Part shown: piece by piece, positions 2,570 to 31,609 of the stretch
Numbering within the stretch: position 1 is the stretch's first letter
Layout of the letters: every line of letters begins with the position of its first letter
Origin: Octopus bimaculoides
Lineage: Eukaryota
Assembly: GCF_001194135.2 (NCBI RefSeq)
Contig: NC_069004.1
Location: 2,486,359 to 2,518,798, forward strand
Direction of reading: 5' to 3'
Length of the DNA: 32,440 bases
The notes under the pieces: model-generated
The model's input: only the letters and a program-made list of their open reading frames with translations
Databases searched by the model: none
Told to the model about the DNA's origin: nothing
Position numbers and translations under genes: made by a program

Positions 2570-3640
2570 CTGGAAGTTAATTGTTTGAAAGTATATCAAA
2601 CTGTGAGTGGTGTAAATTGTAAAAGTGTAAACGAAGACTAGAAGATAATAATTACAGTTTGAGAACTTATTCCATTGCTTTGTTAATTTTTTTGATTTGT
2701 TTAAGACGATTTCATCACATAAAAGCTGTTTTTACAGATTTAGTGCAGTTACATCTCACAGTATATTGGTACACTTTACTATCGATAAACATGAATGCTA
2801 TTTACCAGTCACTGTAACTGATACAGTTTTATCAATGCAGTCATTGTATTGATAAGCATCAGTTATGATCGTTTGGTAACATATTTAGTCTGTCCTTTGC
2901 TTACGAATAAAAGAAAAATGCATCAGTGAAGATAAGAGTGTAATCAAAAAATAAAGTAACTGTGAAGGGAGAGAATTGTGACAGTAAGTTAGAGAGAATA
3001 CCAATTCAGAGATTCTGTTGGGACAGGAATTAATGCCGCCACTTTCAATTCTTTCTGTGTAAACTGAATGTATAAGGACCTCGCACATGCATAAGAATCT
3101 GTTGAAAGGATTGAGGTAACCGACTGGTTATTCAAAGACGGGTGTTCAATTCCAGTTGGCCCCTTTCTTTAATAATATTCTTTCTAAAATCTTGGTGTAG
3201 CTGCGATATAGAATGGTAGAAAAGTCTTAGAATGATGGGTCTGCAATGTGGTTTGTGTTTGTTGATATGTTTAATTAAATTTTATATTAATCCTGGATAT
3301 GTATGGTGGAGCTTACATTGCAGTTCCTTTCTCATGTTGAGTCGTACCATGAAATTTCAGCTTTAAGGAATATTAGTTCAGTGAGAAATGTCGGTGGAAA
3401 GAATTGGTGAAGTTGAGAAACAAAGTTCTTCGAATATTTCTATACGCCTCTTTATCTTCTTAATTCTGGCAAGAACCAATCGATTGTAGTGCATTAACTG
3501 AAATGTAAGAAATCAATAATAAATCATTGAGATCAATATTATATTTTCTTTTCTTGATAACATTAACAATATTATTGATAATTCATACACCTAATGATTA
3601 TATATCGACCTGATAATGTTATATATTTGTCAGTATTATA
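2570..3640 (-). repeat. Duplicated 5' non-coding block of subgroup-A genes (homologous to 5940-7030 and 12560-13555)
   Basis: Shared blocks such as gttgaaa..gtaacc(g/t)a.t.gttatt....gatgtatgttcaat.cc and gaattggt...gttga.aa..aagttctt...tcga.tgt.gtgcat...ctgaa...aatcattga in all three copies, aligned by eye. Confidence 0.85.
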
Positions 3641-3650
3641 CAACTGAAGG

Positions 3651-3788
3651 TCTTTACGTTCTGAGTTCAAATTCTACCGAGGTCGACTTTGCCTTTCATC
3701 CTTTCGGGGTCGATAAATTAAGTACCAGTGGCGTACTGGGGTCGATCTAATCGACTAGCCTCCTCCCCCAAAATTTCGGGCCTTGTGC
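3651..3788 (+). mobile_element. Octopus-type tRNA-derived SINE, 5'-truncated
   Basis: gagttcaaattc B-box-like motif + gaggtcgactttgcctttcatcctttcggggtcgataaattaagtaccag body. Many further copies occur in this window. Confidence 0.85.
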
Positions 3789-4512: not shown

Positions 4513-5893
4513 TTATACTGTTGTGCTGTTATTTGTCTCGTTTGGATGATCCGATGAGCTACATCCTTCAGAAGCTGCTCATTCTTGGATTTCTCCTCTT
4601 GCCAATATTACATACAATATTGCGCCAAACACACATATACCGGCACACGAGACTAATGCAAACTGCCATTCTTCTTGTGTACCATTGAGGGTTAAAGCTT
4701 TTGTAGACAAGGAACTAAAACTTCTAGACATTACGGCAAACGTGTTAGCAATTCCAAATACAACACCAGCATAACTTGGAGCAATGTCATTGTTGTTGAC
4801 GAGAACACCACCACTGGAAAATGATAAAGTTATACCACTGAGAAATAAAAGGAGAGTTATTTGAATGGTTTGGTAACATCTGAGGAATCCTATGGCAATC
4901 AACAGACATGCTGAAGTAACAAGAGAAAATGTTTGGAATGAAACTCGTACAGAACGAGTTGACAGATATTTCTTCGAACGTAAAATATTTGCACATTTTC
5001 CACATAATGGCATAGAAATAATTTGTCCAACCGAAGGAGCAGACGACATGAAACCGCTGGAGGCTGAATTGACCTTTAAGGCTTCTTTCATATATAGAGG
5101 GAGCAATGTTTCGAAAATTATGAACGTCCAGGAATAAGCGAACAAACCGAAGATGATGGCCCAAATAGCAGGGGAAGAAAGCAGTCGTTTCCAAGGTATT
5201 TTTTAAACTAGTCTTTTACTTATTACAGTTCTCTTCAAGGAAGCACGTTCTTCTTCGCTGATAGTGGGATGGACGTCTGGATTATCATAAACAACATAAA
5301 ACCACACACAACTAAACAATAACGATATCCCACCAAATACATAAAATATAGAACCCCATCCGTTATCAAATCCATAAACACAGAGGTAACCTGACGTTGA
5401 AAGACCTACAACAGTGCCTAGAATTTGACTAGCAAATGTAAACCCAATCGATAAACTAATTTCTTGTGGAGGGAACCAACGTGCAAATGAGGAGTGTATT
5501 GCTGGGGGAACAACTCCTGATGCTATACCTGTTAATATTCTTAGAACAAGCATATAGTACCCACTAGTTCGCGATAAACTTGGTTGAAGAATGGTCAGAA
5601 TGGATGCAGAGAGAAATGAACCACCAAGAACTCGTTTACCACCATATTTGTCTGCCAATAAACCACCCAAAGAAGCAGTTGCTAGATAGCCATAGTAGTA
5701 CCCAGCTAATATGTTTGCTTGTAAGGTGTCGCTCCATTCGAATTCTCCTTCAGAATTTCGAATAACTGAATGACTATTTAAACCAGAACAATGTTGGTTA
5801 TTTGAAGTAATGTTAACTTCCTCAGTTGTACGATTGGGTGTTTTCAACATGCATACAAAAGCCATGCTTAGATCAACTCTTAAATTTCGACAT
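4513..5893 (-). pseudogene. SLC17-family pseudogene, copy 3
   Basis: Collinear with copy 2. ATG 5893 is followed by an 83-nt deletion giving MSKFKS*. In-frame CAA>TAA at 5203-5205 and TGG>TGA at 4579-4581. The ancestral tail (AASEGCSSSDHPNETNNSTTV*) ends at TAA 4513-4515. Confidence 0.92.
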
Positions 5894-8249: not shown

Positions 8250-8893
8250 GAATAAGAGGGAAAAAAATGGAGAGAGAATGACAAAAATAGGTTTGAGAAA
8301 AACTGTGCATATATATATATATATATATCAATGTAAGACCCAAGAGTTGAAGTGTAGGAAGAAAGTGGTTTATTGATCGTGTGTGTGCGTGTGTATGTGG
8401 ATTTTCCCCCGTATTTTAGCATGGTAAGCTGAAAAAAAAAATTTTATCTTTCACGGTAGGCAGCCAGTGTTGCCAGGTATGCGAATAAAATGCAAGAGTT
8501 AAGGAAGGGAGCAGATGATATCNNNNNNNNNNNNNNNNNNNNNNNNNNNNNNNNNNNNNNNNNNNNNNNNNNNNNNNNNNNNNNNNNNNNNNNNNNNNNN
8601 NNNNNNNNNNNNNNNNNNNNNNNNNNNNNNNNNNNNNNNNNNNNNNNNNNNNNNNNNNNNNNNNNNNNNNNNNNNNNNNNNNNNNNNNNNNNNNNNNNNN
8701 NNNNNNNNNNNNNNNNNNNNNNNNNNNNNNNNNNNNNNNNNNNNNNNNNNNNNNNNNNNNNNNNNNNNNNNNNNNNNNNNNNNNNNNNNNNNNNNNNNNN
8801 NNNNNNNNNNNNNNNNNNNNNNNNNNNNNNNNNNNNNNNNNNNNNNNNNNNNNNNNNNNNNNNNNNNNNNNNNNNNNNNNNNNNNNNNGAAGT

Positions 8894-29825: not shown

Positions 29826-31381
29826 ATGTCAAAAATTACCAGGTGCATTAAACAATACTCATCGTGTCGTTGGAGGTTATGCTATACTTGTTTAGCAGCT
29901 GTTCTCCTCTTAACAGCATTACGAGTTGACATTAGCATTGCTTTTGCTTGTATGCTGAAAACAACCAACAGTTCATTTCAAGAAGTTAATCATACTGGAA
30001 TAAAGGAAGAATGTCCAGGGTCGGAGAATCAGTTACCAGATAAAACATTTGAAGGCGAGTTCGAATGGAGTAACTCTTTACAGTCCCACATGNNNNNNNN
30101 NNNNNNNNNNNNNNNNNNNNNNNNNNNNNNNNNNNNNNNNNNNNNNNNNNNNNNNNNNNNNNNNNNNNNNNNNNNNNNNNNNNNNNNNNNNNNNNNNNNN
30201 NNNNNNNNNNNNNNNNNNNNNNNNNNNNNNNNNNNNNNNNNNNNNNNNNNNNNNNNNNNNNNNNNNNNNNNNNNNNNNNNNNNNNNNNNNNNNNNNNNNN
30301 NNNNNNNNNNNNNNNNNNNNNNNNNNNNNNNNNNNNNNNNNNNNNNNNNNNNNNNNNNNNNNNNNNNNNNNNNNNNNNNNNNNNNNNNNNNNNNNNNNNN
30401 NNNNNNNNNNNNNNNNNNNNNNNNNNNNNNNNNNNNNNNNNNNNNNNNNNNNNNNNNNNNNNNNNNNNNNNNNNNNNNNNNNNNNNNNNNNNNNNNNNNN
30501 NNNNNNNNNNNNNNNNNNNNNNNNNNNNNNNNNNNNNNNNNNNNNNNNNNNNNNNNNNNNNNNNNNNNNNNNNNNNNNNNNNNNNNNNNNNNNNNNNNNN
30601 NNNNNNNNNNNNNNNNNNNNNNNNNNNNNNNNNNNNNNNNNNNNNNNNNNNNNNNNNNNNNNNNNNNNNNNNNNNNNNNNNNNNNNNNNNNNNNNNNNNN
30701 NNNNNNNNNNNNNNNNNNNNNNNNNNNNNNNNNNNNNNNNNNNNNNNNNNNNNNNNNNNNNNNNNNNNNNNNNNNNNNNNNNNNNNNNNNNNNNNNNNNN
30801 NNNNNNNNNNNNNNNNNNNNNNNNNNNNNNNNNNNNNNNNNNNNNNNNNNNNNNNNNNNNNNNNNNNNNNNNNNNNNNNNNNNNNNNNNNNNNNNNNNNN
30901 NNNNNNNNNNNNNNNNNNNNNNNNNNNNNNNNNNNNNNNNNNNNNNNNNNCGTCGTTAGGACAATTCATATTTTTACCATTATCAGGAAAACTTGCAGAT
31001 GTTATACTTTCCAAGAATTATCTGTCAACTCGTTCAGTCCGAGTAATATTCCAGTCTATCTCTCTTGGTGGATCAGCATCTCTGCTTATTGTCATCGGAT
31101 TTCTGGAATGTGATCAGACTATTTTAACAGGAATCCTTTTTTTCCTCTCTGGCTGTGCCGTGGCATTTTATTCTGGCGGCTTCCTGGTAAACCATATCGA
31201 CGTTGCTCCCAGATATGCTGGAGTTTTATACGGATTTACCAATACATTTGCATCGATAAGTAGTATCTTATGCCCTTTAACGGTTAAAGCTCTCACACCA
31301 AACGGTACTCGAATCGAATGGCGAACAGTGTTGATCATGAGTGGCGCCTTCTCTTTCTGTGGTGCGTTGATTTTCGCGATA
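29826..31381 (+). CDS. SLC17-family transporter, copy 6 (subgroup B); gaps at 30093-30950 and 31382-31539, stop not located
   Basis: ATG 29826 MSKITRCIKQ...LRVDIS...EFEWSNSLQSHM. After the gap the frame reads SLGQFIFLPLSGKLADV...NHIDVAPRYAG...EWRTV...IFAI with no stops. Collinear with copy 5. Confidence 0.88.
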
Positions 31382-31609
31382 NNNNNNNNNNNNNNNNNNN
31401 NNNNNNNNNNNNNNNNNNNNNNNNNNNNNNNNNNNNNNNNNNNNNNNNNNNNNNNNNNNNNNNNNNNNNNNNNNNNNNNNNNNNNNNNNNNNNNNNNNNN
31501 NNNNNNNNNNNNNNNNNNNNNNNNNNNNNNNNNNNNNNNATATAAAAGAAATAACACAAGCGGGTTGATGTTCACTTCAGCTGCTTGACATGTTATTTAT
31601 TTATTGATG

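What the first reader, a model, noticed from the sequence alone, without database searches (positions are those of the whole stretch)
29826..31310. Patchwork gene conversion between inverted, divergently oriented copies 5 and 6
Counted by hand against the reverse complement of copy 5. N-terminus/TM1: 39 mismatches in 126 nt plus one codon indel. 29956-30092: 137 nt identical to 18158-18294. 30951-31063: 113 nt identical to 17372-17484. 31064-31177: 22 mismatches in 114 nt. 31178-31259: 82 nt identical to 17176-17257. Next ~42 nt: 10 mismatches. Sharp alternation of 0% and 20-30% divergence is a gene-conversion signature; the copies form an inverted pair ~11 kb apart. Inference: TM1, TM9 to early TM10, and TM11 escape homogenisation, consistent with selection keeping substrate-facing helices distinct. 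The copy 6 N-terminus (MSKITRCIKQYSSCRWRLCY) resembles subgroup-A copy 2 more than copy 5.
Basis: partly seen in the sequence, partly recalled or inferred. Interest (0 to 1): 0.7.

Follow-up and report, generated by a model that had tools for sequence, protein, structure and literature searches.

The report
Patchy gene conversion between sialin paralogs
Two neighbouring, head-to-head copies of an octopus sialin-like transporter gene share three perfectly identical stretches set in 20-30% divergent sequence, which is the ordinary footprint of recent gene conversion; two of the stretches end at a gap in a short-read assembly, so their full extent is unconfirmed.

Summary
The counts are correct. 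Copy 6 (29826-31381, +) against copy 5 (17135-18421, -) gives 43/127 mismatches, then 0/137, the gap, 0/113, 22/114, 0/82 and 10/41. Each identical run beats 100,000 permutations, and no other paralog pair in the window shares more than 44 identical bases.

The window is Octopus bimaculoides chromosome CM046624.1, inside the known tandem expansion of intronless SLC17A5/sialin-like genes.

Comparison with the O. sinensis ortholog of copy 5 shows tree conflict. In the divergent segments copy 5 groups with its ortholog and copy 6 sits outside. In the identical tracts copy 6 carries copy-5-type sequence, including substitutions made after the species split. Synonymous divergence is 0 in the tracts and 0.63 outside them.

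The best reading is recent, patchy interlocus gene conversion from copy 5 into copy 6 (about 0.7).

As written, the 858-N gap breaks the frame; a copy-5-length fill of 673 nt would restore it. A gap at exactly this place is what a collapsed two-copy repeat produces in a short-read assembly, but no independent data were available.

The copy-2-like N-terminus of copy 6 is an ancestral retention.

This is a new example of a well-known process.

The parts
17135..18421 (-). Copy 5. An intronless sialin-like (SLC17A5-like) MFS transporter gene covering codons 1-429; its 3' end lies in the gap 16654-17134. It is the inferred donor.
   Evidence: Pfam MFS_1 E=2e-47. It is 91.9% identical in DNA to the O. 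sinensis sialin-like gene XP_036368725.1. That ortholog matches the human sialin structures at E=4e-99.
17485..18157 (-). The 673 nt of copy 5 that correspond to the gap in copy 6 (TM2 to TM7/8).
   Evidence: Coordinates follow from the alignments. This is ordinary coding sequence that assembled without trouble in copy 5.
29826..29955 (+). Copy 6, segment A: N-terminus and TM1, unconverted.
   Evidence: 43/127 mismatches to copy 5 and 39/130 to the O. sinensis ortholog, against 8/127 between copy 5 and that ortholog. dS is 1.03. 14-18 informative sites group copy 5 with its ortholog and none group copy 5 with copy 6.
29956..30092 (+). Copy 6, tract B: the TM1-TM2 loop, identical to copy 5 at 18158-18294, ending at the gap.
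   Evidence: 0/137 mismatches to copy 5 and 10/137 to the O. sinensis ortholog. This loop is among the most variable parts of the family (36% between copy 5 and copy 2).
30093..30950 (.). Assembly gap of 858 N (estimated length) inside copy 6.
   Evidence: It breaks the frame as written. The homologous stretch of copy 5 is 673 nt and would keep the frame.
30951..31063 (+). Copy 6, tract C: TM8 to early TM9, identical to copy 5 at 17372-17484, starting at the gap.
   Evidence: 0/113 mismatches to copy 5 and 3/113 to the O. sinensis ortholog.
31064..31177 (+). Copy 6, segment D: rest of TM9 plus TM10, unconverted.
   Evidence: 22/114 mismatches to copy 5 and 20/114 to the ortholog, against 6/114 between copy 5 and the ortholog. 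dS 0.35, omega 0.53.
31178..31259 (+). Copy 6, tract E: the TM10-11 loop and first half of TM11, identical to copy 5 at 17176-17257. It lies inside a contig, with copy-6-specific sequence on both sides.
   Evidence: 0/82 mismatches to copy 5 and 4/82 to the ortholog.
31260..31381 (+). Copy 6, segments F and G: second half of TM11 through TM12, unconverted. The contig ends at the gap 31382-31539 before the stop codon.
   Evidence: F has 10/41 mismatches to copy 5. G has 19/81 to the O. sinensis ortholog; copy 5 is in a gap here. The frame is open throughout (translation).

Best explanation
Copies 5 and 6 are old paralogs, duplicated before the O. bimaculoides / O. sinensis split. They belong to the octopus tandem cluster of intronless sialin-like (SLC17A5-like) transporter genes and lie head to head, 11.4 kb apart.

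Recently, and after the species split, copy 6 was partly overwritten with copy 5 sequence by non-allelic (interlocus) gene conversion. The inferred mechanism is a break in copy 6 repaired from copy 5 on the same chromosome without crossover.

What is readable is two or three identical tracts, B, C and E. B and C are probably the two ends of one tract of about 0.9 kb that spans the gap. A 114-nt island of native copy 6 sequence (D) separates C from E. This requires either two events or one event with patchy heteroduplex repair or template switching.

Shown here: the mosaic, its statistical significance, identity at silent sites, the tree conflict and the polarity (copy 5 type). Inferred: the repair mechanism, the continuity of B and C through the gap, and that the assembly is correct at these points.
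For: (1) The three identical runs (137, 113 and 82 nt) each exceed every one of 100,000 permutations, also on polymorphic sites only. They are unique to this pair.

(2) Silent sites: dS is 0 in the tracts and 0.63 in the pooled unconverted segments. The orthologous dS between copy 5 and the O. sinensis gene is 0.21. Tract B lies in one of the family's most variable parts.

(3) Tree conflict: A and D have 14-18 and 5-6 sites grouping copy 5 with its O. sinensis ortholog. B, C and E together have 7 sites grouping copy 5 with copy 6 and none against.

(4) Polarity and timing: the shared tract sequence is 2.7-7.3% from the O. sinensis ortholog, the normal orthologous distance for copy 5. It carries 7 substitutions that are derived in the bimaculoides lineage.

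(5) Tract E lies inside a contig between copy-6-specific sequence on both sides. The longest exact match within D is 24 nt, so a switch between the two copies there is unlikely.

(6) The gap in copy 6 falls on ordinary coding sequence that assembled cleanly in copy 5. That is what a collapsed exact two-copy repeat gives in a short-read assembly. The contigs of this assembly come from the 2015 shotgun assembly, with Hi-C added later (PMC9068888).

(7) Gap size: 858 N against 673 nt expected is a 27% excess. Copy 5's own 3' gap shows a similar excess, 481 N against about 393 nt in O. sinensis, or 22%.

(8) Conversion between adjacent inverted paralogs is well documented (PMC3966223).
Against: - No independent sequence of copy 6 could be obtained. 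No other protein in the 5.8-billion-protein collection matches copy 5 or copy 6 above 63% identity except the O. sinensis ortholog.
- Two of the three tracts stop at a gap, so up to 673 nt of the supposed tract is unread and the frame is broken as written.
- No copy 6 ortholog was found in O. sinensis, either within 10 kb upstream of the copy 5 ortholog or among called proteins. The native copy 6 sequence of the tracts is therefore unknown.
- Segment F behaves oddly: copy 5, not copy 6, is the outlier there.
Confidence: 0.7

Rival explanations
1. Assembly artefact. Copy 6 is really divergent throughout, and the identical tracts are copy 5 reads or k-mers pulled into the copy 6 contigs during contig extension or gap closing in the short-read assembly.
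For: - Tracts B and C abut the 858-N gap. Their lengths (137 and 113 nt) are on the scale of a short read.
- The contig 30951-31381 is only 431 nt long and has gaps on both sides.
- The assembly is a short-read draft scaffolded with Hi-C, described as gap-rich and fragmented (PMC9068888; PMC10925132).
- No independent copy 6 sequence was found.
Against: - A copy that was 20-30% divergent throughout would assemble as unique sequence and would leave no gap in plain coding DNA.
- Each junction between divergent and identical sequence lies inside a contig.
- Tract E is bracketed by copy-6-specific sequence, and the longest shared exact match in D is 24 nt. Two erroneous switches within 82 nt would be needed.
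- The orientation, order and spacing of the two copy 6 contigs fit one gene.
Confidence: 0.2
2. Inverse history. Copy 6 is a recent duplicate of copy 5, specific to O. bimaculoides, and its divergent segments A, D, F and G were later overwritten by one or more other paralogs.
For: No copy 6 ortholog was seen in O. sinensis. Divergence falls into three tiers, about 33%, about 19-24% and 0%.
Against: - No donor exists. Among all family members retrieved from O. bimaculoides and O. sinensis, the best non-copy-5 matches are only 75% (A), 70% (D) and 55% (F+G) at protein level.
- Copies 1-4 are 31-46% different in DNA.
- There is no homology between the flanks of copies 5 and 6 beyond about 25 nt upstream of the ATG. 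A recent duplication would have had to start almost exactly at the coding sequence.
Confidence: 0.06
3. No exchange at all. The identical tracts are simply the most strongly constrained parts of the protein.
For: Tract E encodes a conserved motif (VNHIDVAPRYAG..TNTF) that has no amino-acid change between copy 5 and the O. sinensis ortholog.
Against: - Roughly 80 synonymous sites show 0 differences, where about 34 would be expected at the pS of 0.425 seen outside the tracts.
- The ortholog differs at 17/332 sites in the same tracts.
- Tract B is among the most variable parts of the family.
Confidence: 0.01

Closest known systems
Interlocus (ectopic) gene conversion between adjacent paralogs, e.g. 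C. elegans hsp16 inverted repeats, hsp70-7/hsp70-8 and fog-2/ftr-1 (review PMC3966223)
   Same: Linked paralogs a few kb apart, with inverted orientation tolerated. Short-to-kb tracts of identity lie in otherwise diverged genes. Transfer is non-reciprocal and polarised. Detection rests on runs of identity and tree conflict.
   Different: Only one haplotype from one short-read assembly is available. There are no population data and no confirmation of the tract that runs into the gap.
Homogenisation of cephalopod tandem gene arrays (protocadherins) proposed by Albertin et al. 2022 (PMC9068888)
   Same: The same genome and the same kind of lineage-specific tandem expansion. Those authors also invoke gene conversion there to explain species-specific clustering of paralogs.
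   Different: That proposal rests on tree shape across whole genes. Here discrete tract boundaries are seen within one gene pair, and the family is different (sialin-like transporters).
Human sialin SLC17A5 (PDB 8DWI, 8U3D, 9AYB) and VGLUT2/3
   Same: Full-length homology: the copy 5 ortholog matches sialin at E=4e-99 over residues 16-469. It has the 12-TM MFS_1 fold. The TM1 arginine in LRV(D/N)L aligns and is present in copies 5 and 6.
   Different: The octopus genes are intronless, tandemly amplified and roughly 40% identical to sialin. Their substrate and cellular location are unknown. Copy 6 is only partly read.
Adaptive gene conversion among newt sodium-channel paralogs (PMC8476164)
   Same: Short conversion tracts move specific transmembrane segments between paralogs of a membrane transport protein.
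   Different: That study ties the conversions to a functional phenotype (toxin resistance). Here there is no evidence that the conversion, or its absence in some segments, is adaptive.

Membership tests
Interlocus gene conversion | Runs of identity between paralogs significantly longer than expected from the overall density of differences | tested here: met
   Runs of 137, 113 and 82 nt. None of 100,000 permutations reached them, on all sites or on polymorphic sites only.
Interlocus gene conversion | The identity extends to silent sites, so constraint cannot explain it | tested here: met
   dS is 0 in the tracts and 0.63 outside them. The ortholog differs at 17/332 sites in the same tracts.
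Interlocus gene conversion | Tree conflict: paralogs group within a species in the tract, and orthologs group across species outside it | tested here: met
   Quartet site counts with the O. sinensis ortholog and copy 2 or copy 4 as outgroup. A gives 14-18 sites for copy 5 with its ortholog and 0 for copy 5 with copy 6. B+C+E give 7 sites for copy 5 with copy 6 and 0 against.
Interlocus gene conversion | Both copies are shown to carry the tract in the real genome (independent reads, long reads or PCR) | not testable with these tools
   No reads or alternative O. bimaculoides assembly were reachable. Protein searches found no independent copy 6.
Interlocus gene conversion | Non-reciprocal transfer with an identifiable donor and acceptor | tested here: inconclusive
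   The tract sequence is of copy 5 type (2.7-7.3% from the copy 5 ortholog), which points to copy 5 as donor. No copy 6 ortholog is available to show what was replaced.
SLC17 / sialin-like MFS anion transporters | MFS_1 domain with 12 transmembrane helices | tested here: met
   Copies 4 and 5 hit PF07690 at E=2.5e-51 and 2e-47. The hydropathy segments are consistent with 12 helices; TM2 was not resolved. The 143-aa fragment of copy 6 gives no Pfam hit on its own but is 84-88% identical to copy 5 and its ortholog.
SLC17 / sialin-like MFS anion transporters | Full-length sequence homology to characterised SLC17 members | tested here: met
   The copy 5 ortholog matches human sialin at E=4e-99, VGLUT2 at 1e-80 and bacterial DgoT at 6e-11.
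SLC17 / sialin-like MFS anion transporters | Anion (sialic acid or acidic amino acid) transport activity | not testable with these tools
   No functional data. The substrate of the octopus expansion is unknown.
Intact protein-coding gene (copy 6) | Uninterrupted reading frame from start to stop | tested here: inconclusive
   The 89 + 143 readable codons are open. The frame across the 858-N gap is broken as written and would be restored by a copy-5-length fill. The stop codon lies in the second gap, 31382-31539.

The most novel reading that the evidence does not exclude
Copies 5 and 6 undergo recurrent conversion. The three divergence tiers (0%, about 20% and about 33%) would be layers of old and recent exchange. 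On this reading, selection repeatedly removes converted alleles in TM1, TM10 and late TM11, keeping two transporters with distinct substrate pockets inside an otherwise homogenised pair. That would make this locus a natural map of specificity-determining helices in the octopus-specific sialin expansion.
Probability: 0.07. Interest if true: 0.5.

Novelty: new member of a known kind. Interest (0 to 1): 0.27.

Why it matters
If real, this shows that the octopus-specific sialin-like cluster is still exchanging sequence between paralogs. Such exchange would blur gene trees and duplication dates for this expansion and can create chimeric transporters.

In practice the locus is a warning. In the short-read O. 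bimaculoides assembly, recently converted paralogs appear as gaps and truncated gene models. Copy 6 has no usable model, and the RefSeq model for copy 5 bridges its gap into unrelated sequence. Family counts and selection analyses based on that assembly will be biased at such places.

Gene conversion between linked paralogs is otherwise textbook biology.

Tried and rejected
- A protein search with the 143-aa C-terminal fragment of copy 6 returned nothing. The word-index search seems unsuited to short queries, so it gave no information.
- Search for a copy 6 ortholog in O. sinensis. There is no match in the 10 kb upstream of the copy 5 ortholog, and synteny is lost after about 600 nt because of repeats. 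None of the called O. sinensis family proteins matches the native segments of copy 6. The region more than 10 kb upstream could not be fetched; the nearest looked-up gene lies 91 kb away.
- Conversion of the copy 6 N-terminus from copy 2: rejected. DNA distance is 31%, the same as to any other family member.
- A swap of segment F between copies 5 and 6 by mis-threading through the shared 82-nt tract: considered and rejected. It makes the fit to the O. sinensis ortholog worse, because G is 23.5% divergent.
- Shared flanking homology that would indicate a recent segmental duplication: none found.
- The 2015 genome paper could not be read. The statement that sialins are an expanded family in octopus therefore rests on a review (PMC6062618).
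- No structure was predicted, because the tool returns no coordinates from which cavity-facing residues could be scored.

Full report
**What the window is.** The copy 5 protein is encoded at GCA_001194135.2, chromosome CM046624.1 of Octopus bimaculoides. Window position 1 corresponds to record position 2,486,359. The window holds six intronless paralogs of one MFS transporter family:
- copy 1: 1-801, +, cut by the window edge
- copy 2: 1070-2536, -
- copy 3: about 4579-5893, -
- copy 4: 11061-12521, -
- copy 5: 17135-18421, -, with its 3' end in the gap 16654-17134
- copy 6: 29826-30092, then gap 30093-30950, then 30951-31381 (+), then gap 31382-31539

Copies 4 and 5 hit Pfam MFS_1. The O. sinensis ortholog of copy 5 (P0002, XP_036368725.1, 'sialin-like') matches the solved human sialin structures over its full length at E=4e-99, and VGLUT2/3 more weakly. 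Database names for relatives are 'sialin-like' or 'slc-17.2-like'. A review lists sialins among the gene families expanded in octopus (PMC6062618). The cluster itself is therefore known.

| Segment | Window coordinates | Mismatches to copy 5 |
|---|---|---|
| A | 29826-29955 | 43/127 (39-43, depending on alignment) |
| B | 29956-30092 | 0/137 |
| gap | 30093-30950 | unread |
| C | 30951-31063 | 0/113 |
| D | 31064-31177 | 22/114 |
| E | 31178-31259 | 0/82 |
| F | 31260-31300 | 10/41 |

The start codons are 11,404 nt apart and the genes are head to head (pairs I5-I7). The 'one codon indel' is really a start-codon shift. Where copy 6 and the O. sinensis gene have ATG, copy 5 has ACG preceded by an in-frame TAG, so copy 5 starts at the next ATG.

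**The gap, tested first.**
- The left flank ends exactly on a codon boundary (Met89, 30090-30092).
- The right flank begins with the last two bases of a Pro codon, and the frame resumes at 30953.
- A fill of length 1 mod 3 is therefore needed. The 858 N are 0 mod 3, so the frame is broken as written: the ORF listing runs through the N and stops at 30959.
- Copy 5 has 673 nt (1 mod 3) between the homologous points, which would keep the frame.
- Gap lengths here are only estimates and appear inflated. Copy 5's own 3' gap is written as 481 N, while the O. sinensis sequence between the same anchors implies about 393 nt, a 22% excess. The copy 6 gap is 27% longer than 673 nt.
- Continuity and frame across the gap therefore remain unknown, but they are compatible with an intact gene.

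**More than chance, and not constraint.**
- With 75 mismatches in 614 aligned sites, none of 100,000 permutations gave a longest, second-longest or third-longest run as long as observed. The same holds when only the 285 sites polymorphic among family members are used (runs of 65, 40 and 32 polymorphic sites).
- No other pair of paralogs in the window shares an exact match above 44 nt.
- Synonymous divergence between copies 5 and 6 is 0 in the tracts. Outside them it is 1.03 (A), 0.35 (D) and 0.78 (F), or 0.63 pooled.
- Tract B encodes the TM1-TM2 loop, among the most variable parts of the family (36% between copy 5 and copy 2).

**Tree conflict, polarity and timing.** The O. sinensis locus (L001) carries the orthologs of copy 5 and copy 4 in the same order.
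- In A and D, copy 5 is 5-6% from its ortholog, while copy 6 is 18-34% from both.
- With copy 2 or copy 4 as outgroup, 14-18 sites in A and 5-6 in D group copy 5 with its ortholog. None (A) and 1-2 (D) group copy 5 with copy 6. Together with a dS three to five times the orthologous value, this places the duplication before the species split.
- In B, C and E the shared sequence is 2.7-7.3% from the ortholog, which is the normal distance for copy 5. Seven sites group copy 5 with copy 6 and none disagree. Seven of the 17 differences from the ortholog are derived on the bimaculoides side.
- Copy 6 therefore carries copy-5-lineage sequence acquired after the split, and copy 5 is the inferred donor.
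- Zero differences in 332 nt, against 17 to the ortholog, put the transfer in roughly the last fifth of the time since the split, or later. This is my calculation.

**Real or artefact?** The contigs of this assembly come from the 2015 short-read shotgun assembly, with Hi-C added later (PMC9068888). A later paper calls that assembly gap-rich, with fragmented gene models (PMC10925132). I could not reach reads or another O. bimaculoides assembly. The protein collection holds nothing copy-6-like. The argument is therefore indirect.

Points in favour of a real exchange:
- A uniformly divergent copy 6 would have assembled as unique sequence. Instead there is a gap in plain coding DNA that assembled cleanly in copy 5. 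That is the expected outcome when an exact repeat longer than a read is present twice and is placed once.
- All four junctions between divergent and identical sequence lie inside contigs.
- Tract E is flanked by copy-6-specific sequence on both sides, and the longest exact match within D is 24 nt.
- The two copy 6 contigs have the order, orientation and spacing expected of one gene.

Points against:
- B and C stop at the gap after 137 and 113 nt, about a read length.
- The C-to-G contig is only 431 nt long.

I put real conversion at about 0.7, artefact at about 0.2, and the remainder on alternative histories.

Hydropathy and the alignment to sialin place the segments as follows:

| Segment | Protein region |
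|---|---|
| A | N-terminus + TM1 |
| B | TM1-2 loop |
| C | TM8 to early TM9 |
| D | rest of TM9 + TM10 |
| E | TM10-11 loop + first half of TM11 |
| F | second half of TM11 |
| G | TM11-12 loop + TM12 |

In the MFS fold (general knowledge), TM1, 2, 4, 5, 7, 8, 10 and 11 line the cavity, while TM3, 6, 9 and 12 are peripheral. The spared segments include the peripheral TM9 and TM12. The converted tracts include cavity-lining TM8 and half of TM11. Omega in the spared segments is 0.39 pooled (0.33, 0.53 and 0.21), which indicates purifying selection. There is no positive evidence that selection shapes the tract boundaries. Two events, or patchy repair, are sufficient to explain the pattern.

The N-terminus of copy 6 is indeed closest in protein to copy 2 and its O. 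sinensis ortholog (73-75%). In DNA, however, it is 31% from copy 2, 31.5% from copy 4 and 34% from copy 5. The MSK..SCRWRLCY motif is shared by nearly all family members. It is copy 5 and its ortholog that have the derived N-terminus.

**Loose ends.**
- Divergence between copies 5 and 6 is three-tiered. A is as far from copy 5 as from subgroup-A genes. D, F and G are at about half the inter-subgroup distance. B, C and E are at zero. This may reflect older rounds of exchange.
- In F, copy 5 is the outlier: 10/41 to its ortholog, against 5/41 for copy 6. F lies right at the edge of copy 5's gap. I have no firm explanation.
- No copy 6 ortholog was found in O. sinensis. The region beyond 10 kb upstream could not be read.

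**Comparison and verdict.** This behaves like ordinary interlocus gene conversion between linked paralogs, which is known to occur in either orientation (PMC3966223). Gene conversion has already been invoked for another tandem family in the same genome (PMC9068888). Three defining features were tested and met: long identical runs, silent-site identity and tree conflict. Confirmation that both copies truly carry the tracts could not be tested. It is a new example of a known process in a known gene expansion, of modest interest. Its main practical value is to flag how converted paralogs degrade short-read assemblies and gene models.

Noticed in passing
window 18413-18433 (-): The first ATG of copy 5 has become ACG, preceded by an in-frame TAG, so its ORF starts one codon later than in copy 6 and the O. 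sinensis ortholog (MMKISG...).
   Followed up: yes
window 17135-17175 (-) = 31260-31300 (+): In the last 41 nt before its 3' gap, copy 5 differs from its O. sinensis ortholog at 10/41 sites, while copy 6 differs at only 5/41. Elsewhere copy 5 is 3-8% from the ortholog. Possible causes are exchange with a third paralog, a contig-end problem, or conversion in O. sinensis.
   Followed up: partly
window 4579-5893 (-): Copy 3 looks like a pseudogene. Relative to copy 2 it lacks about 83 nt just after MSKF (a frameshift that removes most of TM1). It has an in-frame TAA at codon 258 (CAA in copy 2) and a premature TGA at codon 466. A UniProt model (P0042) splices around the stop. The O. sinensis counterpart (P0065, 295 aa) is also truncated, but at a different point.
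   Followed up: partly
window 16654-17134 and protein P0121 (XP_014787305.1): The older RefSeq model for copy 5 bridges the 3' gap by joining 'ILSPLS' to 56 residues of unrelated sequence. The true C-terminus (about 60 aa, judging from the O. sinensis ortholog) is unread.
   Followed up: partly
window 16654-17134 vs L001:11291-11686; window 30093-30950 vs 17485-18157: Two estimated gap lengths exceed the homologous sequence by 22% (481 N against about 393 nt) and 27% (858 N against 673 nt). Gap sizes in this scaffold may be systematically overestimated.
   Followed up: partly
window 11061-12521 (-), around the TM10-11 loop: Copy 4 lacks one codon (GGVL-NNSD) that is present in its O. sinensis ortholog (GGVLVNNSD) and in all other copies.
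   Followed up: no
window 28265-29192 (-): There are ORF fragments with weak, below-cutoff Pfam hits to a mariner-type transposase (Transposase_1, E=0.01) and an HTH domain (E=0.007). They may be a decayed DNA transposon about 630 nt upstream of the copy 6 start.
   Followed up: partly
window 3636-3783, 16323-16483, 26298-27089, 27807-28108; L001:19192-20611: A repeat family of about 120-150 nt (SINE-like?) is scattered through the cluster, including an inverted pair at 26694-26828 / 26943-27077. In O. sinensis it forms a tandem array of about eight units of about 184 nt between the orthologs of copies 5 and 4.
   Followed up: no
window 8523-8888, 13628-14226, 23562-24217: The other large gaps are flanked by TA/CA microsatellites, unlike the two gaps inside copy 6 and the one at the 3' end of copy 5, which sit in or next to coding sequence. 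This suggests two different causes of gaps: low-complexity sequence and paralog repeats.
   Followed up: partly
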